A DNA stretch of 64,000 nucleotides from IMGVR_UViG_3300020438_000007:1-64000, one strand, 5' to 3'. Counted from the first letter of the stretch, positions 3,140 to 58,466 are shown. Program-made: numbers and translations. The notes: generated by a model from the sequence alone, not told the origin.

Positions 3140-3148
3140 TTTTGTAAA

Positions 3149-3179: not shown

Positions 3180-3277
3180 ATACCAACTGCGTTAGTGGTC
3201 GTGCTTACGATCACTGAAATCATAAAGATGTATGGTACAACCTTAAATGGTACTGGTTGTCTCTTTACTGAGTTCAT
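3173..3277 (-). CDS. Small membrane protein (34 aa), not in the ORF track
   Basis: MNSVKRQPVPFKVVPYIFMISVIVSTTTNAVGMF; TAATG overlap with the hli stop. Confidence 0.65.
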   Translation of the reverse strand: MNSVKRQPVPFKVVPYIFMISVIVSTTTNAVGMF

Positions 3278-3399
3278 TACACAAAGCCAGGAATTATTTG
3301 ACCTGTTGTTAGATATGCACCTAACCCTGCGATGATGCCAAGCATGGCAAGTCTGCCATTAAGTTTCTCAGCAACTGATTTTGATTCCTTATCTGTCAT
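3277..3399 (-). CDS. hli: High-light-inducible protein
   Basis: AEKLNGRLAMLG...TGQIIPGF motif; start at MTDKES (3399). Confidence 0.95.
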   Translation of the reverse strand: MTDKESKSVAEKLNGRLAMLGIIAGLGAYLTTGQIIPGFV

Positions 3400-3506
3400 T
3401 AAAAGATGCCTGGAATAATTTGTCCTGTTAAAGCATATGCGCCTACTGCTGCAACGAAACCGAGCATAGCTGCCCAACCGTTAAATCTTTCTGCTTCTGG
3501 TGTCAT
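3399..3506 (-). CDS. hli: High-light-inducible protein (35 aa), not in the ORF track
   Basis: MTPEAERFNGWAAMLGFVAAVGAYALTGQIIPGIF. Confidence 0.95.
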   Translation of the reverse strand: MTPEAERFNGWAAMLGFVAAVGAYALTGQIIPGIF

Positions 3507-3555
3507 GATAGTGTACCTTTTATGTGTTTAAAATGTGTATGATTGGAATCTTCCT

Positions 3556-3747
3556 TTAGAAGATGCCTGGGATGATTTGACCTGTTGTTGTGTATGCAAC
3601 AAGTAATGATACGAAACCGAGCATAGCCCAACGTCCATTCATTTTTTCAGCGTTCTTGCCATACCCTTCATAGGATTCGTCAAGAGTCATCTGAGGTTCG
3701 ATAGAATAGATATTCTGTCTTCCGCCTTGTTCTGTAACAGTTGTCAT
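3556..3747 (-). CDS. hli: High-light-inducible protein
   Basis: AEKMNGRWAMLG...TGQIIPGIF. Confidence 0.95.
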   Translation of the reverse strand: MTTVTEQGGRQNIYSIEPQMTLDESYEGYGKNAEKMNGRWAMLGFVSLLVAYTTTGQIIPGIF

Positions 3748-23193: not shown

Positions 23194-23351
23194 GACCAAA
23201 TCCTAGTTAGTTGACGAACATCTGTTACACCATAGAGTGCCTTGACAGTTCGTTCTGCATCCTCTCTTAAATTAGATGGTGAAAAGAATTCTACTTTTGT
23301 TAATCTATTTGAGTCAAGTAGAATCTGCGCTGACCACTTAGTTTCTTTCAT
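23190..23351 (-). CDS. Hypothetical protein (53 aa), not in the ORF track
   Basis: MKETKWSAQILLDSNRL...RIWS; ATGA overlaps at both ends. Confidence 0.65.
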   Translation of the reverse strand: MKETKWSAQILLDSNRLTKVEFFSPSNLREDAERTVKALYGVTDVRQLTRIWS

Positions 23352-24037
23352 GTCAATTTATTCCAAGTGTCTTTCCAATCTGTGACTGTCACAACCATAC
23401 CTAGTTTGTTATCTGTAATGGCATCTGCTAATGGTCTATCATTACCACCTTCTTCCATCCTATCTCCAAAGAATACTAAATCACCGTCAGGAAAGTCTCT
23501 AATGATCTGACCCTTATCACTTCCCTTACTTGAAATGTCAACACCTGTTATACCACCAACAAAGGCATGTAACTCTGGAAACTTTTCATTGAATCTAGTT
23601 GATATTCCTTCTCTCTCTTTCTTAATATCATCCCAATCACTATAAACTAATCTCTCTGTATGATTGGCACCTCTACCAACAATACTAAAGTTGACACAGC
23701 CTGGTCTTTCTTCTATATGGTTTCCTGTTCTTACAGGGAAGTGACTCTCATGTAGTTCTTCTAGAAGATGTTCCTTTGCATCTAATGGCAACGTCCAATC
23801 GTTTCTGAATGTCAGAAGATCTCCCTCATAAACATCATTACCAGCACAATTATACACCCTCTTACAATTACAGTAAAGAAGGTGTGTAATTTGTTCTATA
23901 GTTTTCTCTCTATTACTTCCTGTTACCAGATAAACTTCGTTTGCCAAGGCAAAACTGTTGAAGAATATTAGAAAGTCAGGGTCAATCTTTTGTCTACTGG
24001 GTGTGAGAGTCCCATCGACATCAAAAATATATTTCAT
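23348..24037 (-). CDS. HAD-IIB phosphomannomutase-like enzyme (eukaryote-type PMM)
   Basis: FDVDGTLTPSRQKI, IEER...NFSIVGR, DK and FFGDR..GGND motifs. Confidence 0.85.
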   Translation of the reverse strand: MKYIFDVDGTLTPSRQKIDPDFLIFFNSFALANEVYLVTGSNREKTIEQITHLLYCNCKRVYNCAGNDVYEGDLLTFRNDWTLPLDAKEHLLEELHESHFPVRTGNHIEERPGCVNFSIVGRGANHTERLVYSDWDDIKKEREGISTRFNEKFPELHAFVGGITGVDISSKGSDKGQIIRDFPDGDLVFFGDRMEEGGNDRPLADAITDNKLGMVVTVTDWKDTWNKLT

Positions 24038-24043
24038 TTATCC

Positions 24044-24071
24044 ATTATACACATTATAAAAAGTTTGTCAA
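24044..24071 (-). promoter_or_regulatory. Sigma70 promoter, probably giving a leaderless mRNA
   Basis: TTGACA(24071-24066)-16 bp-TATAAT(24049-24044); the ATG is 7 nt downstream. Confidence 0.65.
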
Positions 24072-26420
24072 CTATTCTCCGCCTCCGTCGCCTCCGCCGT
24101 TCCCGCCACCATTTCCACCGTTACCGTTTCCACCATGTCCATTACCATTACCGTTTCCATTCTTTCCATTGGTATCATCATCTGAATTGTCTGGTTTTAA
24201 CATTCCGCCATAACCAACTCTATATCCTTTAGGGATAGACTTGCATTTCTTATCATCATTACAATAGTATTCACCTTCACCACACTTTTTCTTCTCTTCA
24301 TCTATTTCATTCTTTCTTACATACTCCTTTCCACCAGCCCCTATGTCAGTTACCTTAACTTTGATCTTTGATGGATCTTTAAGTTTAACTTTAACCATTG
24401 GTTTCTTTGCTTCAATTACAGGAGAGTACTCATCCCTTAGATGATCTGGAATGATGTCAGATACATATTTTTTATGTTCTTTTCTCTGTAGAAGTCTCCT
24501 CCCTCTAGCACCAGCATCCATAGCTTTCATAGGCTCTTTCAACACTGCCTGTTTTCTCTTGACTGCCGCCACCATACCACCAAGTTTCTCAGAAATCAAC
24601 TCACCTGTCTCAGGTTCGTAACCACAGTTCCATGCTCTGAGAGATTTATTGATTCTGGAATCAGGATCTCTTGCAGTCTTAGCAGAGGTAAGTTTTGATT
24701 TCATACCTTTCATTCTTGCACAGAATGATGCTCTTCTCTTGTTACCTTTCTTTTTACTGGGTGCTTTAAGATCTGAGCCTGGATTAGCTCTCTCGTAAGA
24801 CTTACGACCCTTCTCATTCAAACCACCCGAAGAGTTCTTACCAGCCTTTCTTGTCCATGCTGCAGCTTCTGTCATAGAAAGATCAGGAGTATGATCTGCT
24901 GCAAGAGTTCTGTAATCTGGTTCACCCTTCTTTACTGTTCCCTTTTTCTTTGCCATGTTGGCAAGATCTTTTGGTTCTTCTTTTGATTTGTTCCTTGTAG
25001 GATCAATAGAACCCTCAGTAAATTTTACAGGACTTGAGACAGTTCCCTTTCCATCAACATATTTTGTGACTCTAGGGTTCTTCTCATCATCATTTCTAAA
25101 ATCCTTATGTGTTTTTTTCCACTTCTGCCTTGTCATCTCAACAGTTTCTTTCAACTTTTTCTTTTTAGACACCATCATATCTTCCAATCTCTTCTTCTTA
25201 GAGACTGCAATAGCAGACTGTTGTGCTGCATTTTGTGCCTCACCCATCATTTTGGGTCCACCTGCTTTCTTCTCTGCCACTTTCTTTTCATTGGGATTCT
25301 CATTGCCTATGGCAAGATTCCTCATCTTCTGCTTCTTCTGTGCATCCTTATGTTCTTTAGGATTAATCTCAAAGCTATCATTGATCTGAGTAGTGGGGTT
25401 TAGAGTTTCTTTCTTCGCCTTTTCCTGTCTCCTCTTCTTTTCTTTTTGAACTCTCTTCAACATAAACTTATTAGATGGCATACTCTGATCCATCTTACTA
25501 AACTTATCGTGAAGTCTATCCAAGTTGATGTCAGTCTGCCTGTGCATCTTAGCATCTTCTAAGATGTCCCTAAAATTTTCTTTAAGACCCTTAGTTTTCT
25601 TACCTCTTCGGTCTGCATGGTCTGCTCTTCTATCTCTTTGGACACCGCCACCAAGTGGTTCAGATCCATAAGGATTACCGTATCTTTCAAGTCTTTTACC
25701 TGATCTTTTATGATCTGGTACTAATTTGTCAACCTTTGCTTCGTTCACTTTCTTCTTAGGTTTATCAGTACTAACATATGTAGGTTTTGCCGCACCTGAC
25801 TTGGACTGTTGGCCTGGATCTGCTGCCTTCTTTCTCCTTGCCGCAGACTGCCTTTCTGACTTAGACATACTTGCACGTTTAGATGATGACACACACTTAG
25901 GAGTACCCTCGCCTGGCTCGTCACTAGCACAGGTTCCACCTGTAACTACATTAACCCAACCACCTTTACCATCTTTAGACTTGGATCCTTTGAACCACTG
26001 ACGTAGATTACCTTCCTTAACCTCTGGTGTCTTAGGAATCATAACAGGTTCAAACATCTTCTTCTTAGCCCAGTCATCTGGAATCATGAGATGTTTTGCT
26101 TTGAACTGCATGTGTAGAAGAGTAGTGTCAATACCATTCCTTGAAGAAATTTTCTTCATCAGGTCGTCAACTTCACCGTAAGATGGGTAGTCTAATTTTT
26201 CTAGACCATCTTCTAGTTCTTTTACAGCGACTGACTCATTCATTTTTTTCTTCTCAGGTAATCCTTTATGTTTAGTAGATGCAAATTTCTTTACATCTTT
26301 TCTCTTCATGCTGGCAGCAGCTCTTTGAACCTCAAGCGTTTTTTCTCCCTTGAGAGTACCTTTTTGAGCCGCTCTAACAATCCCGAAGAATTTTTGTTGT
26401 TTTTTGGAGACTGCTGGCAT
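24072..26420 (-). CDS. Large basic modular protein, putative internal head polyprotein
   Basis: Lys/Arg-rich modules separated by hydrophobic-X-Glu sites; Gly/Asn tail. Confidence 0.8.
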   Translation of the reverse strand: MPAVSKKQQKFFGIVRAAQKGTLKGEKTLEVQRAAASMKRKDVKKFASTKHKGLPEKKKMNESVAVKELEDGLEKLDYPSYGEVDDLMKKISSRNGIDTTLLHMQFKAKHLMIPDDWAKKKMFEPVMIPKTPEVKEGNLRQWFKGSKSKDGKGGWVNVVTGGTCASDEPGEGTPKCVSSSKRASMSKSERQSAARRKKAADPGQQSKSGAAKPTYVSTDKPKKKVNEAKVDKLVPDHKRSGKRLERYGNPYGSEPLGGGVQRDRRADHADRRGKKTKGLKENFRDILEDAKMHRQTDINLDRLHDKFSKMDQSMPSNKFMLKRVQKEKKRRQEKAKKETLNPTTQINDSFEINPKEHKDAQKKQKMRNLAIGNENPNEKKVAEKKAGGPKMMGEAQNAAQQSAIAVSKKKRLEDMMVSKKKKLKETVEMTRQKWKKTHKDFRNDDEKNPRVTKYVDGKGTVSSPVKFTEGSIDPTRNKSKEEPKDLANMAKKKGTVKKGEPDYRTLAADHTPDLSMTEAAAWTRKAGKNSSGGLNEKGRKSYERANPGSDLKAPSKKKGNKRRASFCARMKGMKSKLTSAKTARDPDSRINKSLRAWNCGYEPETGELISEKLGGMVAAVKRKQAVLKEPMKAMDAGARGRRLLQRKEHKKYVSDIIPDHLRDEYSPVIEAKKPMVKVKLKDPSKIKVKVTDIGAGGKEYVRKNEIDEEKKKCGEGEYYCNDDKKCKSIPKGYRVGYGGMLKPDNSDDDTNGKNGNGNGNGHGGNGNGGNGGGNGGGDGGGE
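24075..24170 (-). repeat. Low-complexity Gly/Asn codon repeat
   Basis: Encodes NGKNGNGNGNGHGGNGNGGNGGGNGGGDGGGE. Confidence 0.8.
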
Positions 26421-26421
26421 G

Positions 26422-26787
26422 TCATGTACCTAATCCTTTTCCTGATTTCATGTTTTCTTTACTACCGTATCTAGCTTTTGTTTCTACATACCCCTTTGTA
26501 TTATCACCATAACCCATCTCTTTGGCATCTGACTTAAGTTTTTGGTTTGCATTATGTTGTTTAAGATACTTACCTTCACCATCAGTCTTCGCACCTTTCA
26601 CTTTAGGTTTCTGGTTACTACCACTTCTCATGATAGCACCTTTACCATACTGAGCTGTGATGGATTTCTTTACTGCGTCCATTACAGAATCTTTAGATTT
26701 AGATAATGGTTTCTTAGTTCCACCTACATCATAACCTGTTTCTTTTTTGAGACGAGTCGCCTCTTGAAAATCTTGGAAGTTCTTCAT
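26422..26787 (-). CDS. Basic protein with a capsid-targeting-like N-terminus
   Basis: MKNFQDFQEA, compared with the T4 IP consensus MKTYQEFIAE. Confidence 0.75.
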   Translation of the reverse strand: MKNFQDFQEATRLKKETGYDVGGTKKPLSKSKDSVMDAVKKSITAQYGKGAIMRSGSNQKPKVKGAKTDGEGKYLKQHNANQKLKSDAKEMGYGDNTKGYVETKARYGSKENMKSGKGLGT

Positions 26788-28094
26788 TTCTTTTTACCTA
26801 AGTCTTTAATAGATGACGTACCTTGAACAATCTTTGAACGTCCATAGGGGTTTCTGACATCATCATTGTCAGCAGACTTACGATACCTTTCTGGTTGTCC
26901 TCTACCAGTTGTGTTATTTCTTTTCTTACCATCAAAAGAAGTATATTGATTGGAAGTTTTGTTTTTCCTACCTTTAAAGGCATATTCATCATTTCTTCTA
27001 CCCATCTTGTTTGCAAGACTTTTACTTATGCCCTTGTCTTCATTACCTTCACCAGCACCAGCATTGTAAGCGGCCATTCTGTTCTCATCAAGTGAGTCCA
27101 GTTCATCTCTCCAATTAGAGAAACTACTCATCTGGATTGCTGCTACCTTTTGTTGTAACTTTGTATCCTGTTTGTTGTCTTTCTTGATTATCTTATTAAC
27201 CAATGCTTTTTTGGCCATGTTAGCCGATTTTAATTTCCGTTCTGCTTGTCTTTGTGAAGCTTGATTGACTGGTGACATAGACATTTCATCTAGGTTGTGA
27301 TCAACTTCTTCTTTCTTTGAACTGTTACCATAGTTTGCAGCACCCTTCTTGCGACACTGTACTAATCTACCTGATGCGTATGCAGATGGCCAAACACTTG
27401 CACTTGCTTTTACTTTTTTATAACAAGCGTCTTTCTTACCACTACCACTTCCTTTCTTATCTTCTTCGGTAACTACTTCTTCTTTATTCAGGATCGCCTG
27501 CCTACGTCCTGAAGGATCTTGTATTGCAATGCGACGTTGCATCTGCTTATTGGCTTCTTTCGATTTACCATGATGTGCAGCGACAACTTCTTTAGCATAA
27601 GCTTTATCAGCCTGACGTGACATCTTCTCTTTAGGAAGTGGTTTGTATCCTTCTAAAAGAGCCTCCAGAACCATATCTCTAGAACCCCAAAGATCATTCT
27701 CACTAATAAATGCCTCTACTAATTCTTCATCAGACCATCTGTCTGTGTCATATCCCTCTTCTACAATACCTGTCAACCAAGTATCAAATGTCTCTCTATG
27801 ATTCTCTTTCTCTAGGAGTTTAAGTGTATTCCATTCCGATCTATACTTTCCTTCCTTCTTTAATTTCTTTTGTTGCCAAGAGTCAAGTGCCTGATCTGGA
27901 CGTTTCCCTGATGCCATCTCAGATTTCTTATGAGCTTGAAATGCAGAAGCGGACTTCGCTCTGTCAGCATCCCTCTGTTGGTTCTTTGCAGCTTGATCTT
28001 GAATCTTTTTCTTTACATTGTCCTCATTCTTTTGTAGATTAGGATGTAAAGGCGATTCATAAATTGCAGAATAGGCTTCAGAAAGTTTGTCCAT
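26784..28094 (-). CDS. Modular basic/acidic protein, putative internal head polyprotein
   Basis: Start at MDKLSE; many L-X-E sites; SNWRDEL motif; late promoter upstream. Confidence 0.8.
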   Translation of the reverse strand: MDKLSEAYSAIYESPLHPNLQKNEDNVKKKIQDQAAKNQQRDADRAKSASAFQAHKKSEMASGKRPDQALDSWQQKKLKKEGKYRSEWNTLKLLEKENHRETFDTWLTGIVEEGYDTDRWSDEELVEAFISENDLWGSRDMVLEALLEGYKPLPKEKMSRQADKAYAKEVVAAHHGKSKEANKQMQRRIAIQDPSGRRQAILNKEEVVTEEDKKGSGSGKKDACYKKVKASASVWPSAYASGRLVQCRKKGAANYGNSSKKEEVDHNLDEMSMSPVNQASQRQAERKLKSANMAKKALVNKIIKKDNKQDTKLQQKVAAIQMSSFSNWRDELDSLDENRMAAYNAGAGEGNEDKGISKSLANKMGRRNDEYAFKGRKNKTSNQYTSFDGKKRNNTTGRGQPERYRKSADNDDVRNPYGRSKIVQGTSSIKDLGKKK

Positions 28095-28125
28095 TTTAAA
28101 AGGATACAGTATAGCTATCATAACG

Positions 28126-28146
28126 TATTTATTATATCAATAAATA
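28126..28146. promoter_or_regulatory. Back-to-back divergent late promoters
   Basis: ATAAATA on the minus strand (28132-28126) and on the plus strand (28140-28146), at the strand switch. Confidence 0.8.
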
Positions 28147-28175: not shown

Positions 28176-30731
28176 ATGGCTCGTCAGGGAATATTTACTG
28201 GATTCACACCGAATGATGGTCTGGGAGATTCCCTTGCCTTAGGCGCATCCAAAGTAAATCAAAACTTTACAGAGATTTATACTACCTTCGGTGACGGTAC
28301 AAATCTCAGTGTTAATGCAGGGAGTGCTGGTACTTGGACGAAGGCAGGGAACACAGGAATTTACACAAGTAAGAACGTTGGCATCGGTACGACTGATCCT
28401 ACTGCTTCTTTATTTGTATCAGGTAATGTTCAATTAACAGGTATTACAACTGGAACATTCGTTGGAGATGGTTCTGGTCTAACAGGTGTGACCGCAGTTG
28501 GTCAAGGTGTTGTTATAAAAGACAGTGGAACACTAGTTGGTGTTGCACAAAGTCTTAACTTAGATAAGAATTTAACTGTCACACAGGTGTTTGGTGGAAA
28601 TGTAACAGTTTCTGCTGCTGATACTGTAGGATTTGCGTTCACTTCTGGATTCTCTACTACATCTGCATACGCAAACGTTTCTGGAGTATCAACCACTGCA
28701 ACAACTGCTGGGTTTGCTGACACTGCAACACTGGCATACACTGCAAACTTCGCCACGATTGCTGGTATCGTAACTTACTCACAGGCATCTGGTATTGCAA
28801 CCAACTCTGGTGTTGCTGAGTATGCAAAGGTAGCTGGTATCGCATCATACGTTGCCAATGCAGGGTTCTCAACCATGGCGGGGTATGCACATACCGCAGG
28901 CATCGCCACAGTCGCACAGAATTTAACAGGAACTCCTTCTATTGTTATCGACAATATCAATTCTGCGATTGGTATTGTGACCATGCCTGGTCAAGGTAGT
29001 AAGATGCGTTTCGACTTTGACGCAACAGGTGATCTACCCCAATCAACCTCTTGGAGAGGTATGTTTGCATGGGCAAACAACACCAAGACTGCATATGTTT
29101 CCAGTGGAACCACAATGGGTGGTTACAATGGTTGGAGACAGATACTTCATCAGGATGACGAAGGCAACTACTTTACAGTAGGTGTCATAACTGCATCCAA
29201 GTTTGCTGGTGATGGATCTGGACTTACAAACTTACCATCAACAGATAGTATTTGGAGAACAAACTCCACTGGTATTCACACTCTCAGCAACGTTGGTCTT
29301 GGAACTACCAACACAGAAGGATATAAACTTAACGTACTAGGTAACTTAAAGTTACAAGGCAGACTGGACGGAACTGCAACAGATAATATACTACCTCACT
29401 TGTGGTCAACCTACGCATCTCTACCATCATCATCCACTTATCATGGTGCATTTGCTCACGTTCATGAGACAGGAAAGGCATACTATGCACACGCTGGTTG
29501 GAATGAACTGGTCAATAAAAATCAAGATCAATCGGTTGGAACTGGAACTGAAAACTATAGAGTTGGTGTTCTAACTGCAATATCATTTACTGGAGATGGA
29601 TCTGGTTTAAGTAATATCAATGTATCATACGCAGCTTCAGCTGGTATTGCAACTCTATCACAAGGACTAGAAGGTAAACCAGACATCTTAGTTGCTAACA
29701 TCAACTGTACTGGTATTACTACTAGTGCAACATTCGTTGGAGATGGTTCTGGACTGACAGGTATCACTGCATCTGGTAGTGGTATTATCATCAGAGAAGG
29801 CGGCACACTCGTAGGAACTATTGGAACTGTAAACTTCGGAACTGGTTTCGATGTTTCCCCTGCATCTGCTGGTGTAGTAACAGTCACCACATCAGGTGGC
29901 GGCGGTGGTGGTATCTCTGGTATTGTATATCAGGAGGAAGGATCTACTGTTGGTACTGCACAAACCGTTAACTTCATTGGTGTTGCATGTACAGTAACAC
30001 ATAGTGGTGGAGTTGCAACTGTCAACTTGGCAGGAGCAGTACCATTCACAGGACCTGCTGCAAGCATAACTGCACTTGACATTACACAGTATGAAGCAGC
30101 ATATGGATGGGGTGATCACTCTGGTGCTGGATATCTGACAGGTATAGGTGGTCAAGGATTAGGTAATCTAAACAACGTTTCTAATGTATCTCCAAGTACA
30201 AGTGATGTATTAACATGGAGTGGATCACAGTGGGCACCAGCCGCACCTACAGGTGGTAGTGGTGGAATAATAATTAAAGAAGAAGGAAGTCAAGTTGCAG
30301 CAGGAATCACCTCACTTAATTTTGTTGGATCTACTGTAAGTGCAACTGCTTCTGGAACAGATGGAACTATCACAATCACTTCTGGTGGTGGTGGAGGTGG
30401 CAGTATTTCCACAACTGGAGTTGGAACATACACTGCATCTGCTGGTGTGGAACAACAGGTAGATTCATGGTCTAAGTTAAGTTACTCTGGTGCAGAGTAC
30501 ACATTTATGATTGGTCTAGGAACATTCAGACAATCACAGAAAGTTCTTGTCATGCACGATGGAACTACGGCGTTCTCACAAGAATATGGCATCATGTTCT
30601 CTCCAGAACAACAGGTATCAATCGCTGCAACTGTAAGTAGTAACAACGTTCTAGTTAAAGTTACTCCTGAGTCAGGGATATCTGGTTTATCAACATACAG
30701 ATTCGTTAAAACTTTTATTGAGAACCTATGA
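28176..30731 (+). CDS. Tail fibre-like virion protein
   Basis: gp9/gp10-like N-terminus (NDGLGDSL..GASKVNQNFTEIY); VGIGTT and FxGDGSGLT repeats; Gly/Thr-rich. Confidence 0.85.
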   Translation: MARQGIFTGFTPNDGLGDSLALGASKVNQNFTEIYTTFGDGTNLSVNAGSAGTWTKAGNTGIYTSKNVGIGTTDPTASLFVSGNVQLTGITTGTFVGDGSGLTGVTAVGQGVVIKDSGTLVGVAQSLNLDKNLTVTQVFGGNVTVSAADTVGFAFTSGFSTTSAYANVSGVSTTATTAGFADTATLAYTANFATIAGIVTYSQASGIATNSGVAEYAKVAGIASYVANAGFSTMAGYAHTAGIATVAQNLTGTPSIVIDNINSAIGIVTMPGQGSKMRFDFDATGDLPQSTSWRGMFAWANNTKTAYVSSGTTMGGYNGWRQILHQDDEGNYFTVGVITASKFAGDGSGLTNLPSTDSIWRTNSTGIHTLSNVGLGTTNTEGYKLNVLGNLKLQGRLDGTATDNILPHLWSTYASLPSSSTYHGAFAHVHETGKAYYAHAGWNELVNKNQDQSVGTGTENYRVGVLTAISFTGDGSGLSNINVSYAASAGIATLSQGLEGKPDILVANINCTGITTSATFVGDGSGLTGITASGSGIIIREGGTLVGTIGTVNFGTGFDVSPASAGVVTVTTSGGGGGGISGIVYQEEGSTVGTAQTVNFIGVACTVTHSGGVATVNLAGAVPFTGPAASITALDITQYEAAYGWGDHSGAGYLTGIGGQGLGNLNNVSNVSPSTSDVLTWSGSQWAPAAPTGGSGGIIIKEEGSQVAAGITSLNFVGSTVSATASGTDGTITITSGGGGGGSISTTGVGTYTASAGVEQQVDSWSKLSYSGAEYTFMIGLGTFRQSQKVLVMHDGTTAFSQEYGIMFSPEQQVSIAATVSSNNVLVKVTPESGISGLSTYRFVKTFIENL

Positions 30732-32944
30732 TTCATACTAGTACGAACACTCTCGATAGGTCAGGCCTGGCTACCAAGCCAGTTGGAACTGATGACAAGA
30801 AGGCATACTCTATTAAATGTTATACCAAAAATGATTGGGTATTCATTCATGAGGAACTAGAGAAAGATGGATCATTGGAAGATAACATTCCTGATCCAAC
30901 AATAGTATGTCCTGACAAGAAGGAACATAGTGATACCAGAGCAACTTACATGTTGACTGATGCGGAAGCAGAGGATTTAAGAAAACATGAGAAGGTACAG
31001 TGGGTCTGTATTGACTATGATGTATATCCAGGCAACTATTCTCCAGATCCAAAAGATATTATCGCTGGTGTACAAAAATTTGGTAGGTTCAATAAGACAG
31101 TATCTAACTACAGAGCATGGAATACTTCGCCAACAGGCACTAGGCCACCAACAACCCAGGCTGGTATTGGTGCAACAGATAAGAACAGAACTGGATATCA
31201 AATACTAAGACATACACAAAAAGAAAACCCTTGGGATGCAACATCCACTGGGCTGACTGGATCTGATCATCTAATAATAGAGACTGAACCAAAGCAATTA
31301 GGTGATGGCACTGGTGTAGATGCAATCGTAGCTGATGATGGTTTCTGGATTGCACACCCAGAATTTGTAACAACTGACGATGATCCTGTAGGTTGGTCAA
31401 CAGGAAACGCATTAACATGGAGTGGTATATCTACAACTCCAGGCACATGTGGTGTTCTAGATGTACTTCTTGATGGTCCATATTATATTGACCCAGCATG
31501 GTTCAATGCAGATCCAGGCAATAGATTGATTCAACGTTGGGACGGAACAACAGTACCAGTAGAGTCTGTTGCAAGAGCATGGTGGTCTGATTCAAGTCAG
31601 AGATCAGTAGGATTCTCTACCATTGGCACTACAAATGGTTTCAGTGCTTCATATAGTAGACAAAGTTGCAACGGAAGTAACACACAGAAACCAACCAACG
31701 GTTCTGATCACGGAACTCAGTGTTCTGGTCAAGTATATGGTAAGAATTATGGATCGGCATATAACTGTAACAAATGGGTATTGAATGGTATCGGTGGTTC
31801 TAATGCTGGAATCAATGGTAGTCAATTTGATATACAGAAACTCTTCCACTTATATAAACCAAACTATGATAGACATTCTGCTATCACTGGTAAAGAAAAT
31901 GATACTAAAAACCCCACACTATCAAGTAATAGTTGGGGTTACAGATCTAGCTCTATACATACCACAGGTTACTATTGGTATAGACCATCAGCAACAGATG
32001 GATCAGAGACTGGCGTATCCTATAGTAGTGGTGCTGAACCAGAATTCATTGATTTACTAGGCGCATATGGTGATAGTAATAGGTGTAAAGGAGAGATGGT
32101 AGAAAGTTCTGTAACTGCTGCTGGTGATGAGTTAGCTGAGGCGGGAGTTATCTTCGTCTGTGCTGCTGGTAATAGTAATCAGACTCAATGTAGTCCTGGC
32201 GATCTTGACTTTGATAATTATTGGGCTACCAGTTCTCAAGGTAACAGTTCTTCCTTAGAATCCGCAACTCATAGTGAATTTGGATTGACATGTTATAACA
32301 CTATCAATAGAAGAGGATGGCCACAGGCACTAGGTAAAACCACATCTGGATTATCTACTGCTGGAACTGAATATGCTGCTATTAATATTGGTGCATTAGA
32401 TGATCAAATTACAAGTAGTGGACTAGGTGGTAACACCACAGACTACAAAGAAAAGAAAGTGAACTATAGTGATATGGGAACAGGTATTGATTGTTATGGT
32501 GCTGCTGATGACACACTCACAGCAGATGGAAGAGCATCATCTCTTACATATGTTCACCCAGAAACATATACTGGTCTCACACTTACCCCATATGATATTG
32601 ATTTTGGTGGTACTAGTTCTGGATGTCCTACATGTGCTGGTTGGTTAACTACCAAACTACAATATAATAGAGATTGGACTTGGAGAGAAATAAAAGATTG
32701 GTTGAAAAACCAGTGTGGTAGTCAATCTCCTGACAGATTTTACTATGGTGATAACATTACATCTTTCACTGCAACAACAGCTGCATGGGAAGATATGTAT
32801 TCCGTTCAGATGTATGGTCAAGGACCTGTTGTCATCTGGGATGCTCCTACTGGTTCACCTACCGAACCCAAAAAACCTGAGATAAAAATCACCAACTCCC
32901 CTAACCTTAAAATCAGTGGTGGAGTTGAGATAAAGTTCTCTTAA
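30728..32944 (+). CDS. Subtilisin-like S8 serine peptidase
   Basis: D (VADDG), H (DHGTQCSG), oxyanion N (AAGN) and S (GGTSSGCP); N-terminal propeptide-like region. Confidence 0.85.
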   Translation: MIHTSTNTLDRSGLATKPVGTDDKKAYSIKCYTKNDWVFIHEELEKDGSLEDNIPDPTIVCPDKKEHSDTRATYMLTDAEAEDLRKHEKVQWVCIDYDVYPGNYSPDPKDIIAGVQKFGRFNKTVSNYRAWNTSPTGTRPPTTQAGIGATDKNRTGYQILRHTQKENPWDATSTGLTGSDHLIIETEPKQLGDGTGVDAIVADDGFWIAHPEFVTTDDDPVGWSTGNALTWSGISTTPGTCGVLDVLLDGPYYIDPAWFNADPGNRLIQRWDGTTVPVESVARAWWSDSSQRSVGFSTIGTTNGFSASYSRQSCNGSNTQKPTNGSDHGTQCSGQVYGKNYGSAYNCNKWVLNGIGGSNAGINGSQFDIQKLFHLYKPNYDRHSAITGKENDTKNPTLSSNSWGYRSSSIHTTGYYWYRPSATDGSETGVSYSSGAEPEFIDLLGAYGDSNRCKGEMVESSVTAAGDELAEAGVIFVCAAGNSNQTQCSPGDLDFDNYWATSSQGNSSSLESATHSEFGLTCYNTINRRGWPQALGKTTSGLSTAGTEYAAINIGALDDQITSSGLGGNTTDYKEKKVNYSDMGTGIDCYGAADDTLTADGRASSLTYVHPETYTGLTLTPYDIDFGGTSSGCPTCAGWLTTKLQYNRDWTWREIKDWLKNQCGSQSPDRFYYGDNITSFTATTAAWEDMYSVQMYGQGPVVIWDAPTGSPTEPKKPEIKITNSPNLKISGGVEIKFS

Positions 32945-49209: not shown

Positions 49210-49365
49210 TTATCTCTTTTTATTTGCTGCTTCTTTCCACCTTCTCAATATTGTTCCCTTAAAAGGTAGATCATATCCAGCAACAGGACCTTTGGAATCT
49301 GCAGCAGAAGTGAAACCACCTGTACCAGCAGTCATCATCTCATTAAATTCCTTAAAAGTCTTCAT
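49210..49365 (-). CDS. Small protein (51 aa) with a T4 IPI-like N-terminus, not in the ORF track
   Basis: MKTFKEFNEMMTAGTGGFTSAADSKGPVAGYDLPFKGTILRRWKEAANKKR; AAGGA SD; ATGA overlap. Confidence 0.75.
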   Translation of the reverse strand: MKTFKEFNEMMTAGTGGFTSAADSKGPVAGYDLPFKGTILRRWKEAANKKR

Positions 49366-54652: not shown

Positions 54653-56200
54653 TTAATAACCTCTCTTATATTTAGCGGATTCATCCTCTGGGTTGATGAT
54701 GATTGTATTTTTACCACTCATGGGTTTAATCTCTTTGTTCTTATCTGGATACTTTTTATCAGTTTCCCAGATAAATTCTTCACGCCAGTCAGAGTATGAC
54801 TCATTTCTTTGTTCAGAGACTCCCATTTTTTTCAGTGCTGCTGCTTTTGCTTTATCCTTCTGCATCTGAGCATAGGTTCTCATGTTTTTCTTGCCCGCAG
54901 CCTTTGCCTCCTGTTCCGCTTTGATGAAATTAGTTGCCTCTTTGACTTCTTTTGCCTTTTCATCTCTCAATCCTTGAATGATTTTATCTGCTGCGTTTCT
55001 TGTCTGCTCTTTACTACTTGCTTTAGTTGCTGGTCTACCCCTCTTACCACTAGTAGATCCTTTTGGTCTACCAGCTTTCTTCGGAACTGATGTTGCCTTA
55101 ACAGTGATTGCCTTATCTCCACTCTCATCATCTTTCTTTCCCTGTGCTTTCATGGCGGCCATGAGTCTATTAGCGCCTGCGTCAGACTTCTTGTTCTTCT
55201 CATTCTGATTGATAGCAGCTTTGACTGCACCCTTCACTATAGGAGAATTGGTCTTCCCACCTTCTCCACCTGTTGTAGTAAGTTTTCCGCCTGGTGATCT
55301 TACAATGTTTCCAATTTTCTGTCCAGAGTCTTTCTCTACTTGGTTCTTAGCAGAGGTGTCTTTCGATGCTGTTTTAATCTGTTTTTCAACTGTTTTATTA
55401 TCAGGCGATTTTGTGAACTTCCTCATCGACGAAGAGTCTTTACTCTGTGTGGGAGTCTTGGATGTATCATTAGTAGTTTGTTTCCTTACCTTTCTAGATT
55501 CTCTATACTTATCCTCTGCTGTTTTTCTTGCAGCTGCTCTTCTTTCCTGGCCTGGTCTATACTTTTCAGCATCACCTGTGATAGTTTTACCACCAGAAGT
55601 TTTTACTTCTTGGGGTTTGTCCATACCAATAAACTTTTTGCCAACACCCTTAAGTGCTGTACCAAGTACACCCCTAGTTCCAGTACCACCAGTAGTAACT
55701 TTATCTGAATCAGAACCTGTAACTTTACTTCTTGGTAATCCTTTTGTGTCTTGTGCTTTCTTTTTATCTTTATAAGCAGAGATGCCACCACCAATAGTAG
55801 ATTGAGCTCTACCAGCCAGGGCTCTCATATTAGTTCCAAGTCCAGTTCCTCTGGTTGCATCTTCTTTATCTGGTCTGTATTTTGCAAATCCTGATACAGC
55901 TCCGCCTACTGCGGAAAGTTGTCTTTGTCCTCTATCAGACGATGCGTACTTACTTGCTCTATCTTTATTCCTATCTAACGTCGCCTGTATCCCTCTTTTC
56001 TTAGTTCCATCGTTTAATCTTCCAGCCCTTGTAGGAATACTAGGAGCCTGAGCACCTTTAGTTACAGGAGATCTAGCTCCTGTAGTGGTGGACTTAACAG
56101 AAGCTGTAGTTTTAGTTTTATCAAAACGTTTTGAGACATCCACTCCAACAATCTCAGTTATTGGAGACTGTTCATATTCAAATTGTTCAAAGCTTTTCAT
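54653..56200 (-). CDS. Large basic low-complexity protein with a capsid-targeting-like N-terminus
   Basis: MKSFEQFEYE..ITE; Lys/Gly/Ala-rich body; ESYSDWREEF motif. Confidence 0.8.
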   Translation of the reverse strand: MKSFEQFEYEQSPITEIVGVDVSKRFDKTKTTASVKSTTTGARSPVTKGAQAPSIPTRAGRLNDGTKKRGIQATLDRNKDRASKYASSDRGQRQLSAVGGAVSGFAKYRPDKEDATRGTGLGTNMRALAGRAQSTIGGGISAYKDKKKAQDTKGLPRSKVTGSDSDKVTTGGTGTRGVLGTALKGVGKKFIGMDKPQEVKTSGGKTITGDAEKYRPGQERRAAARKTAEDKYRESRKVRKQTTNDTSKTPTQSKDSSSMRKFTKSPDNKTVEKQIKTASKDTSAKNQVEKDSGQKIGNIVRSPGGKLTTTGGEGGKTNSPIVKGAVKAAINQNEKNKKSDAGANRLMAAMKAQGKKDDESGDKAITVKATSVPKKAGRPKGSTSGKRGRPATKASSKEQTRNAADKIIQGLRDEKAKEVKEATNFIKAEQEAKAAGKKNMRTYAQMQKDKAKAAALKKMGVSEQRNESYSDWREEFIWETDKKYPDKNKEIKPMSGKNTIIINPEDESAKYKRGY

Positions 56201-56207
56201 GTGTATC

Positions 56208-57059
56208 CTACTTCTGGATGGACTTGTGTGCTTTAAGAATAGAACTTGCGTGTTTCTCTACAGTCTCTTCTGACATAGTTTCTTCCACTTCCTCTTCTTG
56301 TTTAGAGAACGAAACTGGACTCTTGACATTGAAACTCTCGTTCTTAGGACGGCAATCATTCACCATCTTGTTTCCTTTCTTCTTCATTCCGACTTTCTTA
56401 TGAGTATCCCAACAGGCAACTTCATCTACGTTCTCTACTTCTTCCTTCTTCATTGCCTTTCCGATTGCGTCACGACGATTCTTAAGGTATGAATCAGACT
56501 TATCTACATCACCATCATTATCAACATCAGCATCTTCCTTTCCGACTGGATCTAATTTCTTTTTCTTTTTCTTTCCTTCCTCTAAAGGAGTTACTTGATA
56601 CCTTGTACCAGACATCTCTCCAAGAGTAGTAAGGTTTGCTGCAACCTGATCCCAGAGTCTATTGGCCAAGTTCTCATCTGGATTACCTAATGGTTTTGGA
56701 GTAACAACATCAGTAATCTCATGAGTTAAATTACCATCCATATCATGCAATTCAACAGATTCACTGTTGTTAAGTTGACCCTTTCCTCTAAGTTTATCAG
56801 CAGTATCTTTAACTTTTCCGACACCATCAGCAACAGCACCAACCTTACCAGCAATGTTTGCAGCCTTAGAAAGTCCACCCATTACTTTAGCACCCTTAAT
56901 GGCACCCATGGCGGCCTTTGCTGCCAGTAAAGAACCAGTAACTACAGCCTCATCAGTCTGTTCCTTATCATCATGCTCGATGACTTTACCATCAGTATCT
57001 TTCTGATGATGTTCATACATTGATTTATAAGCATTAACCAGTTTTGAATCGTCAGTCAT
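56208..57059 (-). CDS. Modular protein with a DxDxDG loop, putative internal head protein
   Basis: DADVDNDGDVDKSD; CW...KKKGNKMVNDC module; multiple hydrophobic-X-E sites; late motif at 57102-57096. Confidence 0.8.
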   Translation of the reverse strand: MTDDSKLVNAYKSMYEHHQKDTDGKVIEHDDKEQTDEAVVTGSLLAAKAAMGAIKGAKVMGGLSKAANIAGKVGAVADGVGKVKDTADKLRGKGQLNNSESVELHDMDGNLTHEITDVVTPKPLGNPDENLANRLWDQVAANLTTLGEMSGTRYQVTPLEEGKKKKKKLDPVGKEDADVDNDGDVDKSDSYLKNRRDAIGKAMKKEEVENVDEVACWDTHKKVGMKKKGNKMVNDCRPKNESFNVKSPVSFSKQEEEVEETMSEETVEKHASSILKAHKSIQK

Positions 57060-57098: not shown

Positions 57099-58466
57099 TT
57101 ATCCCTTTCCAACTTTGTAAGGTATAGATGTATCATTATATTTTACTCCAGGTCCACTAGGAGGATCATTAGGATTCTTTACTTTCTTGCCATCATGGTA
57201 AGAACCACTGGTAATTGGTTTAATAATAGGATCATTATTCCATTTCTTATCACCTTGGCCTGGTGTCATTCTCTGCATGTATTGTCTATACTCATCTGTC
57301 CCTACATCATATGCCTCTGTCAAGTCTTTTAACCATGCTTTGTACATAGTAGACTCTGGAGTTTGTACGATAACATGATTCGCACCTCTTCTAGTAATTC
57401 TACCTCTCACTCCAGTGTTTACATTCTCTACTAATGATCCTACTTTATAACATTGCTCGTTGAGATATGCAATTCTCAATCCAAATGGATCTAACTTAGG
57501 TGCATACTGCCATGTCTCAGAAGCTAATGATCCTCTAAGTTGATCATCAGTGGCTCCCATAGATTTTTGAATGAGGTTGAAGAGATTTTTTTTCTCCATA
57601 TTACCTAAGTTGGGAATACCTTTTGCAAATCCTTTGAAGTCATCCTTTGCTACTGCATCTCTCATCTTAGATGCAGACATACCCTCTACACCATCTGAGT
57701 CTGGATCTCTTGCACCAGCAGATATGACTTGAAGATCCTCAAAATCATATAAGTCACCATTATATTTCTGTGCAAGACTTTGGAATTCGGAGAGTCTATC
57801 TTGTCCTACAACTATTGTTATTGCTTTGTATCCTAGATTGAAGGCACCTGTAAGAACATCAAATATAGTTCTTGCATTAGGATCATCTTTGATATCCTCT
57901 TCATAATCTGGGAACATCTTCCTCATATATTCTATTTTCGCACCAGGCTGTAGAGGATTCTTCTTAGAATCTACACTACGACTTGGATATACCTTCAAGT
58001 CAAATCCTAGTCTGTTTGCTTCTGATTTTGCTTTTTGTAATAACTTTTCGTGTCCTACTGTTGGTGGATTGAATCTACCAAATACAACTACTGCACCCTC
58101 GCTAGCAGGATTTCCCATCACCTCTGCTGTCTGTTTATCCGATTCGCCAGGCTCAGGTGATTTGGTTGCGGTAGAAGAAGGATCTTCCTTTGGTTTTGGT
58201 TTTGGAGAAGATGCAACTGGAGCAGGTGCTTTCTTCTGGACAGTGGGTTTCTCAGGTGTGGCAACTTTAGTAGATTTTGGATCGTCGGTGGCGGCCGCAC
58301 CCCCTCCTCCTGTGTATTGAAGTTTACCGCTTACAGTTTTTGCAACGAATTTACCCTTAGCATCATACCAGCCTCCATGACCGTCGCCCTTTAGTCCCTT
58401 GAGTTTAGCCTCAGTGGATGCAGCAGTCTTTACAGCTTCTGTTAAAAATTGACCGAAGGATTTCAC
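57099..58466 (-). CDS. Cytidylyltransferase-like HxGH nucleotidyltransferase with a capsid-targeting-like N-terminus
   Basis: GTG start MKSFGQFLTEA; FGRFNPPTVGHEKL, VVGQDR and MSASKMR motifs; late motif at 58498-58492. Confidence 0.88.
   Translation of the reverse strand: MKSFGQFLTEAVKTAASTEAKLKGLKGDGHGGWYDAKGKFVAKTVSGKLQYTGGGGAAATDDPKSTKVATPEKPTVQKKAPAPVASSPKPKPKEDPSSTATKSPEPGESDKQTAEVMGNPASEGAVVVFGRFNPPTVGHEKLLQKAKSEANRLGFDLKVYPSRSVDSKKNPLQPGAKIEYMRKMFPDYEEDIKDDPNARTIFDVLTGAFNLGYKAITIVVGQDRLSEFQSLAQKYNGDLYDFEDLQVISAGARDPDSDGVEGMSASKMRDAVAKDDFKGFAKGIPNLGNMEKKNLFNLIQKSMGATDDQLRGSLASETWQYAPKLDPFGLRIAYLNEQCYKVGSLVENVNTGVRGRITRRGANHVIVQTPESTMYKAWLKDLTEAYDVGTDEYRQYMQRMTPGQGDKKWNNDPIIKPITSGSYHDGKKVKNPNDPPSGPGVKYNDTSIPYKVGKG

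What the first reader, a model, noticed from the sequence alone, without database searches (positions are those of the whole stretch)
24072..28094. Putative capsid-packaged polyproteins built from small basic modules separated by prohead-protease sites
Seen: the 782 aa protein splits into about 12 short, mostly Lys/Arg-rich modules at hydrophobic-X-Glu sites (MNE|S, VKE|G, VNE|A, LKE|N, ILE|D, MGE|A, LKE|T, FTE|G, MTE|A, ISE|K, VIE|A, IDE|E). Several modules look like folded mini-domains with Cys pairs (GNLRQWF..C..PKC; AAAWTRK..SFCARM..WNC; CGEGEYYC..C). The neighbouring 26784 protein shows the same pattern (LSE|A, VEE|G, LLE|G, LDE|M, LDE|N), and the 121 aa gene starts MKNFQDFQEA. A late promoter heads the operon. 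Knowledge: T4 gp21 cleaves after Glu at (L/I)-X-E during head maturation, and T4 internal proteins are injected with the DNA; IPI* inhibits the GmrSD nuclease. Inference: a modular delivery system in which one gene yields many injected peptides for DNA condensation or anti-defence, with exchangeable modules.
Basis: partly seen in the sequence, partly recalled or inferred. Interest (0 to 1): 0.78.

Follow-up and report, generated by a model that had tools for sequence, protein, structure and literature searches.

The report
Cyanophage modular head-cargo polyproteins
A marine T4-like cyanophage encodes late-expressed, lysine-rich proteins built from small interchangeable modules joined at sites that match its head-maturation protease, which suggests that one gene supplies many small proteins packed in the capsid with the DNA; cleavage and function remain untested.

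Summary
The window is a T4-like cyanomyovirus close to S-SSM7. The three minus-strand ORFs form one late operon. The 782-aa and 445-aa proteins rank first and second of 52 window genes for hydrophobic-X-Glu enrichment.

Their modules are shuffled among thousands of marine phage proteins. Module starts are preceded by Glu in about 98% of distinct contexts, with P3 hydrophobic in about 80% (background 28%) and P1' G/A/S in about 90% (background 23%). Cassette indels begin and end at these sites.

In five phages without a T4-type head pathway, the same module is a free-standing gene with no leader and no Glu.

The 121-aa protein starts with a T4-type capsid-targeting leader (MKNFQDFQE|A; T4 IPIII is MKTYQEFIAE|A). 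So does the cytidylyltransferase found repeatedly in cyanophage virions.

Homologues of the 782-aa protein were detected by mass spectrometry in S-SM1 and S-SCSM1 virions. The cyanophage protease is 44% identical to T4 gp21, and the gp23 maturation site is conserved.

Cleavage, head-internal location, ejection and function are inferred, not shown. No module has a known function. I found no published description. Verdict: a new variant of the T4 internal-protein system. Interest is about 0.7.

The parts
28126..28132 (-). Late-promoter core ATAAATA (cyanophage NATAAATA type) heading the three-gene operon. A second core at 28140-28146(+) serves the divergent tail-fibre-like gene.
26784..28094 (-). 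First gene: 436 aa from Met at 28094 (445 aa if started at 28121), pI 9.6. It has a conserved N-terminal MDKLSE|AYSAIYE| and a helical central domain. Linker-located Phi-x-E sites lie at residues 6, 13, 210, 270 and 337 (436-aa numbering).
27285..27464 (-). Two-Cys module 'KKDACYKKV..WPSAYASG..C' within the first gene. In other cyanophages it lies inside the 782-aa-type protein.
27084..27125 (-). Recurrent junction element SFSNWRDELDSLDE| ([FY]S-x-WR..Phi-x-E|), which precedes diverse modules in relatives.
26422..26787 (-). Second gene: 121 aa, 20% Lys, pI 9.9. The predicted mature product is 112 aa with net charge +15.
26761..26787 (-). T4-type capsid-targeting leader MKNFQDFQE|A (aromatic residues at positions 4 and 7; Phi-x-E).
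24072..26420 (-). Third gene: the 782-aa modular protein (T4-GC119 family), 17% Lys, net charge +76, about 12 segments.
26253..26420 (-). Module A, residues 1-56 (Pfam DUF3008). Helical with confident AF2 prediction, ending at LPE|.
26049..26216 (-). Residues 69-124: a conserved acidic helical block bounded by VKE| and MFE| (both Glu 100% conserved).
25740..26012 (-). Module B, residues 137-227 (GNLRQWF..C..PKC..KKKVNE|). It forms the N-terminus of proteins in S-B05 and ACG-2014f.
25578..25739 (-). Cassette, residues 228-281 (VNE|..LKE|). It is replaced or absent in relatives.
24588..24866 (-). Module C, residues 519-611 (Pfam DUF6321 core 527-597; AAAWTRK..RAWNC, then a linker ending in ISE|). 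It is usually the C-terminal end of the protein in relatives (124 of 146 representatives) and is stand-alone in many phages.
24297..24410 (-). Cassette, residues 671-708 (VIE|..IDE|). It is absent in S-SSM7, and other cassettes are inserted at the same site in relatives.
24075..24296 (-). Module D, residues 709-782 (CGEGEYYC..C mini-domain plus an Asn/Gly-rich tail). It forms the N-terminus of the S-SCSM1 virion protein gp029.
57099..58466 (-). Outside the finding: a cytidylyltransferase (T4-GC190 family) that begins MKSFGQFLTE|A, a perfect T4-type CTS, if started at GTG 58466. A late-promoter core lies at 58492-58498(-).
56208..57059 (-). Outside the finding: a 283-aa protein sharing PHROG families with the operon. 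It contains the CW..C module flanked by VDE| and KNE|. A late-promoter core lies at 57096-57102(-).
54653..56200 (-). Outside the finding: a 515-aa Lys-rich protein (net +54) starting MKSFEQFEYEQSPITE|, with a YSDWREEFIWE| junction element near the C-terminus.
49210..49365 (-). Outside the finding: a 51-aa ORF starting MKTFKEF, identical over 7 residues to T4 IPI.

Best explanation
The operon encodes head-cargo proteins of a T4-like cyanophage. These work like T4's internal proteins but are organised as polyproteins.

**Proposed mechanism.**
1. The three genes are transcribed late from an NATAAATA promoter.
2. Their products enter the prohead core. The 121-aa protein enters through an N-terminal T4-type capsid-targeting sequence. 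The 445-aa protein carries a conserved short N-terminal propeptide. The 782-aa protein enters by an unknown route, perhaps by binding of its very basic modules to the acidic gp22 scaffold.
3. The gp21-type prohead protease cuts after Glu at hydrophobic-X-Glu|(Gly/Ala/Ser) junctions in flexible linkers. This removes the leaders and releases about a dozen small, mostly basic mini-proteins (4-11 kDa, pI about 10, several with one Cys pair).
4. The mini-proteins stay with the packaged DNA and probably leave with it at infection.

Because every module carries its own junction, modules can be inserted, deleted or swapped at these sites without disturbing the rest. This would explain the thousands of architectures seen in the ocean.

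**Shown:** ORFs, motif enrichment, module shuffling, junction logo, CTS similarity, the natural control, and virion presence of homologues.

**Inferred:** cleavage at internal sites, location inside the head, ejection, and any role in DNA charge neutralisation or counter-defence.
For: **Motif enrichment.** The two large proteins have the highest Phi-x-E enrichment of 52 genes in the window.

**Module shuffling across Kyanoviridae and metagenomes**.
- 7,426 small proteins and more than 5,537 large proteins carry the DUF6321-type module.
- 2,394 cluster representatives at 50% identity carry it, in hosts of 105-1228 aa.

**Junction logos.**
- First set: 147/149 distinct contexts have Glu just upstream; P3 hydrophobic 82% vs 28% background; P1' G/A/S 90% vs 23%.
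- Independent non-redundant set: 139/143 with Glu, 78% P3 hydrophobic, 91% P1' G/A/S.

**Boundaries and cassettes.**
- Coverage steps fall at 137, 225 and 517, against cuts at 136, 227 and 518.
- Cassette indels have both ends at Phi-x-E| in 13/107 cases vs 0.6% null. The same ATYPSDF..EIDE| cassette sits at three different sites in different phages.

**Natural control.** In 5 of 5 non-T4-type phages the module is a free gene starting MAK(T/S)PAW or similar, with no leader and no Glu, and lies next to capsid or scaffold genes.

**Leaders.**
- Stand-alone copies in cyanomyovirus-like sequences carry MK-x-[FY]-x-x-[FL]..E| leaders.
- The real T4 leaders are MKTYQEFIAE|A and MKTFKEF..ITE|A. The published CTS rules assign positions 4 and 7 to targeting and positions 8 and 10 to processing.
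- The cytidylyltransferase detected in virions starts with a canonical CTS in six cyanophages.

**Virion mass spectrometry.**
- S-SM1: T4-GC119 (13 peptides), GC190 (25), GC1454 (10) and GC1455 (7).
- S-SCSM1: gp029.
- S-CREM2: the cytidylyltransferase.

**Protease.** Cyanophage gp21 is 44% identical to T4 gp21. The gp23 site GSFLAE|A aligns with T4 GSFLTE|A.

**Structure and transcription.** The AF2 model is beads-on-a-string, with the nine best-conserved junction sites in low-confidence linkers. Late-promoter cores lie before both loci.
Against: - No direct evidence of cleavage at any site in any cyanophage. The published proteomes give only presence.
- The 782-aa protein and most large relatives lack an N-terminal CTS, so head targeting is unexplained.
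- In the family alignment, site Glu residues of p782 are on average no better conserved than other Glu (0.66 vs 0.64), and several listed sites are poorly conserved.
- The unanchored HSP-end test gives only a modest enrichment (22% vs 14% within 3 aa).
- Module B junctions have a hydrophobic P3 in only 38% of cases, and often have it at P4 instead.
- More than half of the protein is low-pLDDT, so finding sites in linkers discriminates poorly.
- Syn9 encodes a T4-GC119 member that was not detected in its virion.
- In this genome the operon lies beside tail-fibre genes and a subtilase-family gene.
- The protease gene is not in the window.
Confidence: 0.6

Rival explanations
1. Prohead core or scaffold accessories. 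On this view the proteins are functional stand-ins for T4 gp67/gp68, which cyanophages lack. They help build or size the prohead, are chopped up by gp21, and are mostly expelled before DNA packaging. They would not be injected cargo.
For: - gp67 and gp68 are reported missing from all cyanomyoviruses.
- T4 gp22, gp67 and gp68 are cut at many L/I-x-E sites.
- T4 gp68 combines a Phi-x-E-rich half with a very basic tail.
- In most cyanophages the cassette sits in the head/packaging gene block between the terminase subunit genes.
Against: - Peptides from these proteins are found in mature virions.
- The modules are highly conserved mini-domains (>=85% identity across more than 140 unrelated host architectures).
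- They exist as autonomous genes in podophages that have no such core or protease.
- Hypervariable cassette content is unexpected for an assembly scaffold.
- S-SCSM1 already has two small virion proteins at the gp67/68 position.
Confidence: 0.15
2. Uncleaved beads-on-a-string virion proteins. On this view the proteins are multi-domain structural or internal proteins whose Lys/Glu-rich linkers merely resemble protease sites. At most the N-terminal leader would be removed.
For: - There are no cleavage data.
- p782 site Glu residues are not better conserved than other Glu overall.
- Lys/Glu-rich linkers are common.
- The N4 vRNAP precedent shows a large protein packaged unprocessed.
Against: - The junction logo has a specific shape (P3 hydrophobic, P1 Glu, P1' small) that matches gp21 and the gp23 site.
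- The same module is preceded either by an internal E| junction or by a T4-type cleavable leader.
- The Glu disappears in phages without gp21.
- Cassettes begin and end exactly at E|.
Confidence: 0.15
3. Tail- or baseplate-associated proteins, possibly processed by the neighbouring subtilase-family protein rather than by gp21.
For: In this genome and in S-SSM7 the operon is divergent from a tail-fibre/baseplate-connector-like gene, which is followed by a Peptidase_S8 protein.
Against: - In most other cyanophages the cassette lies between the gp16 and gp17 genes.
- In podophages the free modules lie next to capsid or scaffold genes.
- T4-type capsid-targeting leaders are present.
- Glu-specific junctions fit gp21, not typical subtilases (my own knowledge).
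Confidence: 0.05

Closest known systems
T4 internal proteins IPI, IPII, IPIII with the capsid-targeting sequence, processed by gp21 (Black laboratory; review PMC9026906)
   Same: - N-terminal leader MK-x-[FY]-x-x-F-Phi-x-E| followed by a small residue.
- Small Lys-rich basic products.
- Late expression.
- A gp21 homologue with the same apparent specificity.
- Hyperplastic loci in which only the leader is conserved.
- A non-structural enzyme cargo (here the cytidylyltransferase) comparable to T4 Alt.
   Different: - Here many cargo units are concatenated in one polypeptide with internal junction sites.
- Most of the large proteins have no N-terminal CTS.
- The mature regions share no detectable homology with T4 IPs.
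- Cleavage and ejection are unproven.
T4 prohead core proteins gp22, gp67, gp68
   Same: Multiple L/I-x-E sites per protein, cut by gp21 into several fragments, some of which stay in the head.
   Different: - The core proteins are acidic or coiled-coil assembly proteins encoded between the portal and capsid genes.
- These proteins are basic strings of conserved mini-domains that also exist as separate genes in unrelated phages.
Polyvalent proteins of phages and conjugative elements (Iyer et al. 2017, PMC5512222)
   Same: Many domains sit in one polypeptide that is predicted to travel with the DNA into the new host. Combinatorial architectures are proposed to result from an arms race. The authors draw an analogy to viral polyproteins.
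   Different: - Polyvalent proteins carry recognisable enzymatic or effector domains and are released by embedded peptidase domains.
- Here the modules are tiny and non-enzymatic, with DUF-only annotation.
- Release would be by the trans-acting prohead protease at short junction motifs.
- Cyanophages are not treated in that work.
Inner-body and ejection proteins of giant phages (phiKZ, 201phi2-1, SPN3US) processed by a gp21-like protease
   Same: Many head-internal, ejected proteins are cleaved after Glu by a T4-gp21-related protease (abstracts).
   Different: - The motif there is reported as small-X-Glu rather than hydrophobic-X-Glu (my own knowledge).
- Processing there mainly removes propeptides.
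- There is no evidence of shuffled mini-module polyproteins.
Pfam DUF6321 (PF19846) and DUF3008 (PF11450)
   Same: Residues 527-597 and 3-58 of the 782-aa protein match these families above their cut-offs.
   Different: Both families are of unknown function. No paper mentions DUF6321.

Membership tests
T4-type CTS-bearing internal head proteins | N-terminal leader of about 10 residues with aromatic residues at positions 4 and 7, a hydrophobic residue at 8 and Glu at 10, followed by a small residue | tested here: met
   - p121: MKNFQDFQE|A (Glu one position early).
- Cytidylyltransferase: MKSFGQFLTE|A (exact fit).
- p51: MKTFKEF.
- p515: MKSFEQFEYE..ITE|.
- T4 leaders were read from NC_000866, and the rules come from PMC9026906.
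- This is NOT met for the 782-aa protein, which starts MPAVSKKQQ.
T4-type CTS-bearing internal head proteins | A cognate gp21-type prohead protease cutting after Glu in L/I-x-E | tested here: inconclusive
   - The protease gene is not in the window.
- It is present in all 16 cyanomyoviruses, including S-SSM7 (Table S8).
- S-SCSM1 gp21 is 44% identical to T4 gp21, and the gp23 site is conserved.
- The specificity has not been measured.
T4-type CTS-bearing internal head proteins | Protein present inside mature heads in processed form and ejected with the DNA | not testable with these tools
   Only presence of homologues in whole-virion proteomes is known.
T4-type CTS-bearing internal head proteins | Sequence homology of the mature region to IPI, IPII or IPIII | tested here: not met
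   No Pfam, PHROG or PDB match links them. The similarity is confined to the leader.
Polyvalent proteins (Iyer et al. 2017) | 2-15 domains in one polypeptide, encoded by a phage in a virion-gene context | tested here: met
   There are about 12 segments in p782. The operon is late and lies beside structural genes, and homologues are in virions.
Polyvalent proteins (Iyer et al. 2017) | Recognisable effector or enzymatic domains plus embedded peptidase domains for release | tested here: not met
   Only DUF3008 and DUF6321 are found, with no peptidase or enzyme domain.
Prohead core/scaffold proteins (gp22, gp67, gp68) | Multiple gp21 motifs per protein | tested here: met
   18 and 12 motifs, about twice the expected number.
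Prohead core/scaffold proteins (gp22, gp67, gp68) | Acidic or coiled-coil character and a gene position between the portal and major capsid genes | tested here: not met
   pI 9.6-9.9 and net charge +76. The genes are located elsewhere. Cyanophage gp22 is a separate gene.
Pfam DUF6321 / DUF3008 | Score above the curated gathering cut-off | tested here: met
   DUF6321 scores 77.4 bits against a cut-off of 28.5. DUF3008 scores 24.1 against 24, which is marginal.
phiKZ-type processed inner-body proteins | Cleavage motif with a small residue (S/A/G) at P3 | tested here: not met
   P3 is hydrophobic in 78-82% of junctions. The phiKZ motif itself is from my own knowledge.

The most novel reading that the evidence does not exclude
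Marine T4-like cyanophages may run a combinatorial capsid-cargo system. On this reading the gp21 junction (Phi-x-E|small) and the T4-type leader act as universal plug-in connectors, so that mini-proteins and even enzymes (such as the NMNAT-like cytidylyltransferase) can be added, removed or swapped as cassettes. All of them would then be delivered into the host with the DNA as a pre-made first wave of counter-defence or takeover factors. The thousands of architectures in ocean metagenomes would be the record of an arms race fought with injected mini-effectors. An injected NAD-salvage-type enzyme could, for example, pre-empt NAD-depleting defences; that last point is speculation from my own knowledge.
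Probability: 0.3. Interest if true: 0.88.

Novelty: new variant of a known kind. Interest (0 to 1): 0.72.

Why it matters
**For phage biology.**
- Tailed phages are not known for polyproteins. A trans-processed polyprotein whose junctions double as recombination-tolerant cassette boundaries would be a new way of organising and evolving virion cargo.
- It would extend T4's capsid-targeting and gp21 paradigm to the most abundant myoviruses in the ocean.
- It would explain why 'non-structural' enzymes such as the cytidylyltransferase keep turning up in cyanophage virion proteomes. Authors have noted this without offering a mechanism.
- It would give function-directed handles on several very abundant families of unknown function, including DUF6321, DUF3008 and T4-GC119.

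**Practical use.** A conserved leader and junction motif would allow prediction of the injected proteome from sequence. It could also be used to load foreign proteins into cyanophage heads, as was done in T4.

Tried and rejected
**Tests that gave weak or no signal.**
- The unanchored test of BLAST HSP ends against Phi-x-E positions gave only a modest enrichment (22% vs 14% within 3 aa). HSP ends are too noisy, so I relied on anchored module starts and indels instead.
- The alignment-wide comparison of site Glu with other Glu showed no difference for p782 (0.66 vs 0.64), because the mosaic alignment is poor. For p445 the difference is clear (0.93 vs 0.52).
- AF2 models of both large proteins are low-confidence (pLDDT 53 and 56). 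They are useful only as a domain/linker sketch.
- The fold search gave only generic helical hairpins (Z <= 6.5).

**Searches that found nothing useful.**
- PDB sequence searches found nothing.
- The ESM Atlas returned only unnamed viral clusters.
- The S-SCSM1 supplement held no peptide-level proteomics data.
- Clokie 2008 is not held in the library.
- The P-SCSP1u cryo-EM paper does not mention the small free-standing proteins.

**Explanations rejected.**
- Compositional artefact: the enrichment ranks top of 52 genes, and the junction logo is position-specific.
- gp22-type scaffold: these proteins are basic rather than acidic, and a separate gp22 gene exists.

Full report
**What the window is.** The 64-kb window is from a T4-like cyanomyovirus (Kyanoviridae). 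The closest sequenced relative is Synechococcus phage S-SSM7, at about 82% nucleotide identity over half of the region.
- 26784-28121(-), 445 aa, or 436 aa from the Met at 28094;
- 26422-26787(-), 121 aa;
- 24072-26420(-), 782 aa.

The ORFs overlap or abut. The S-SSM7 orthologues are SSSM7_234, _235 and _236 (T4-GC1371, 422 and 119).

**Is the pattern more than chance?**
- [LIVMF]-x-E occurs 18 times in the 782-aa protein (9.5 expected) and 12 times in the 445-aa protein (5.9 expected).
- These are the two highest z-scores among 52 genes of the window. All other genes together give observed/expected 1.14.
- Not all sites are equally credible. In family alignments the P1 Glu is >=92% conserved at E56, E68, E124, E136, E227, E394, E611 and E670. 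It is poorly conserved at E281, E288, E383 and E629, and E536 lies inside the DUF6321 domain.
- In the 445-aa protein the sites at 95-148 lie in a predicted helical domain. Those at 6, 13, 210, 270 and 337 lie in low-confidence linkers.

**Modules are real and shuffled.** PHROG and Pfam hits cover separate pieces of the 782-aa protein: DUF3008 at 3-58, DUF6321 at 527-597, and PHROGs whose profiles start exactly at residue 137. Comparison with eight Kyanoviridae loci shows the following:
- Module B (137-227) is the N-terminus of proteins in S-B05 (MQE|GNLHKWF) and ACG-2014f (MGNLHKWF).
- Module C (519-599) ends the protein in the six polyprotein-type relatives compared. It is a stand-alone 89-aa gene in P-TIM40.
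- Module D (709-747) is the N-terminus of S-SCSM1 gp029.
- A two-Cys module of the 445-aa protein (KDACY..WPSAYASG..C) lies inside the 782-aa-type protein in five other phages.
- A further CW..C module is present in S-SSM7 and elsewhere, but cleanly absent here.

In the large databases, 7,426 small proteins and more than 5,537 large proteins carry module C. The 445-aa family has more than 4,233 members. An exhaustive search finds 2,394 representatives of 50%-identity clusters. Among the best 150, a module that is >=84% identical is attached to hosts of 105-1228 aa, and it is C-terminal in 124 of 146.

**Boundaries coincide with Glu junctions.**
- For module C, 147 of 149 distinct upstream contexts have a Glu within a few residues of the module start. 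P3 is hydrophobic in 82% (28% for all Glu in these proteins) and P1' is G/A/S in 90% (23% background).
- An independent, non-redundant set gives 139/143, 78% and 91%.
- Modules F, D and H behave alike (76-89% P3 hydrophobic). Module B keeps the Glu (53/54) but often has the hydrophobic residue at P4.
- In the window's own protein the three sharpest steps in homologue coverage (137, 225, 517) fall within 1-2 residues of cuts 136, 227 and 518.
- Of 107 distinct indels of >=15 aa against close relatives, 26 can be placed with Glu at both ends (null 6.4%) and 13 with Phi-x-E at both ends (null 0.6%).
- The same ATYPSDF..EIDE| cassette sits after MVE| in S-SSM7, after VIE| in a metagenomic relative, and after KTE| in S-SSM4.
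- A recurrent junction element, [FY]S-x-WR..Phi-x-E|, precedes diverse modules.
- An unanchored HSP-end test is only modestly positive.

**A natural control.** In five phages without a T4-type head pathway, module C is a free-standing gene. These are pelagiphages Lederberg, HTVC103P and HTVC304P, Planktothrix phage Pra-JY27, and the T7-like P-SCSP1m. In these phages the gene starts MAK(T/S)PAW.. or similar, with no leader and no Glu. In four of the five it lies among head or other virion structural genes. In two of them the GLYANIHAKR module is the neighbouring gene. The Glu junction is therefore not part of the domain. It appears only where a gp21-type system exists.

**T4-type capsid-targeting leaders.** The T4 leaders, read from the T4 genome, are MKTYQEFIAE|A (IPII, IPIII) and MKTFKEFTSTTTPVSTITE|A (IPI). 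The literature assigns positions 4 and 7 to targeting and positions 8 and 10 to processing.
- The 121-aa protein starts MKNFQDFQE|A.
- Its positional counterparts elsewhere start MKTFKQFMSE|S, MKSFQDFLQE|S and MKSYKQFMSE|S, although their bodies are unrelated.
- Stand-alone module C copies commonly carry such leaders, and some are mini-polyproteins made of a leader, a small module and module C.
- Only four ORFs in the window start this way: p121; a 515-aa Lys-rich ORF (54653-56200); a 51-aa ORF (49210-49365, MKTFKEF); and the cytidylyltransferase (57099-58466, GTG start, MKSFGQFLTE|A).
- The cytidylyltransferase leader is conserved in P-TIM68, Syn9, S-RIM2, S-SM2 and S-SM1.
- The cytidylyltransferase (T4-GC190) is the 'non-structural' protein found in virions of S-SM1 (25 peptides), S-SCSM1, S-CBWM1 and S-CREM2.
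- So the leader predicts virion packaging for a protein whose packaging is already experimentally known.

**Virion presence and the protease.**
- T4-GC119, the family of the 782-aa protein, varies from 276 to 2985 nt among 15 genomes and was detected in S-SM1 virions (13 peptides). It was not detected in Syn9.
- The S-SM1 member is a 495-aa string of the same modules with E| junctions.
- S-SCSM1 gp029 is annotated as a virion protein from MS.
- In S-SM1 the neighbours of the cytidylyltransferase (GC1453, 1454, 1455) were also detected, and GC1455 starts MLSFKELQE|K.
- The protease gene is not in the window, but gp21 is in all 16 compared cyanomyoviruses.
- S-SCSM1 gp21 is 44% identical to T4 gp21 over the catalytic core. 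T4's gp23 site GSFLTE|A aligns with GSFLAE|A, and cyanophage gp22 is acidic and full of Phi-x-E.

**Structure and function.**
- AF2 gives low-confidence beads-on-a-string models. For p782 the confident blocks are 1-50, 61-110, 290-340, 400-469 and 720-745. The nine best-conserved junction sites lie in low-confidence linkers, but 56% of the protein is low-confidence, so this is only consistent, not discriminating.
- Predicted products are mostly 4-11 kDa with pI about 10, and several have exactly two Cys. The net charge of p782 is +76.
- No module has a solved or annotated relative. Function therefore remains inference from composition, head association and hypervariability.

**Comparison with what is known.** The system works like T4's CTS/gp21 internal-protein system. 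It differs in concatenating many units with internal junctions.
- Most large proteins lack a CTS, so their targeting is unexplained.
- It resembles gp22/gp67/gp68 in multi-site cleavage, but not in charge, gene position or conservation.
- The nearest concept, polyvalent proteins, involves enzymatic domains released by embedded peptidases and does not cover cyanophages.
- I found no paper linking capsid-targeting sequences to cyanophages, none on DUF6321, and none of the cyanophage reviews or proteome papers I read mentions internal proteins.

**Verdict.** I rate it a new variant of a known kind, with confidence about 0.6 in the core mechanism and interest about 0.72.

Noticed in passing
window 57099-58466 (-), with ATAAATA at 58492-58498 (-): The cytidylyltransferase (T4-GC190 family, repeatedly found in cyanophage virions) begins with a perfect T4-type capsid-targeting leader, MKSFGQFLTE|A, if started at its GTG. 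The leader is conserved in P-TIM68, Syn9, S-RIM2, S-SM2 and S-SM1. About 110 residues of low-complexity linker precede the enzyme domain.
   Followed up: yes
window 54653-57059 (-): This is a second late operon of the same kind. It holds a 283-aa protein with the CW..C module flanked by VDE| and KNE|, and a 515-aa Lys-rich protein (net +54) with the leader MKSFEQFEYEQSPITE|. Their S-SM1 positional counterparts (GC1454, GC1455) are MS-detected virion proteins.
   Followed up: partly
window 56208-57059 (-), residues ~165-195: An acidic motif, KKLDPVGKEDADVDNDGDVDKSDSYL, resembles a calcium-binding DxDxDG loop. It is conserved in Syn9 gp185, S-RIM2_175 and S-SM1_191.
   Followed up: no
window 49210-49365 (-): A 51-aa ORF starts MKTFKEF, identical to the first seven residues of T4 IPI. 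It has a weak PHROG hit to the N-terminal part of a 'major head protein' family.
   Followed up: partly
window 24044-24071 (-): A perfect sigma-70 consensus promoter (TTGACA-16 nt-TATAAT, 12/12) lies immediately after the stop of the 782-aa gene. It probably drives the downstream HAD-like gene (23348-24037) as an early gene and marks the end of the late operon.
   Followed up: no
window 30728-32944 (+): A 738-aa protein with a subtilase (Peptidase_S8) domain lies in the divergent late operon, right after the tail-fibre/baseplate-connector-like gene. Its substrate is unknown, and it is formally an alternative protease candidate.
   Followed up: partly
window 28095-28121 (-): Nine codons upstream of the likely start of the 445-aa gene (MIAILYPFK) are conserved at the amino-acid level in many relatives (MIDILYPFK, MIALLYPLK and others). 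They overlap the promoter-proximal region, so the true start is ambiguous.
   Followed up: partly
L010 (S-SCSM1) 3117-3670: Two small MS-detected virion proteins (93 and 90 aa, paralogous-looking) sit between the portal and protease genes. T4 has gp67 and gp68 at this position, and those two are said to be missing from cyanophages.
   Followed up: no
L015 (P-SCSP1m) 2459-2877; L023 (HTVC304P) 1328-1692: In T7-like marine podophages, the DUF6321 module and the GLYANIHAKRKR module are adjacent tiny genes inside the capsid/scaffold gene block. This suggests small basic head-associated proteins also exist in phages without proteolytic maturation.
   Followed up: partly
window 24075-24170 (-): An Asn/Gly-rich low-complexity tail (NGNGNGNGHGGNGNGGNGGGNGGG) ends the 782-aa protein. 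The same kind of tail follows module D in S-SSM7 and S-SCSM1, and in S-SCSM1 it acts as a linker ending in VSE|G.
   Followed up: no
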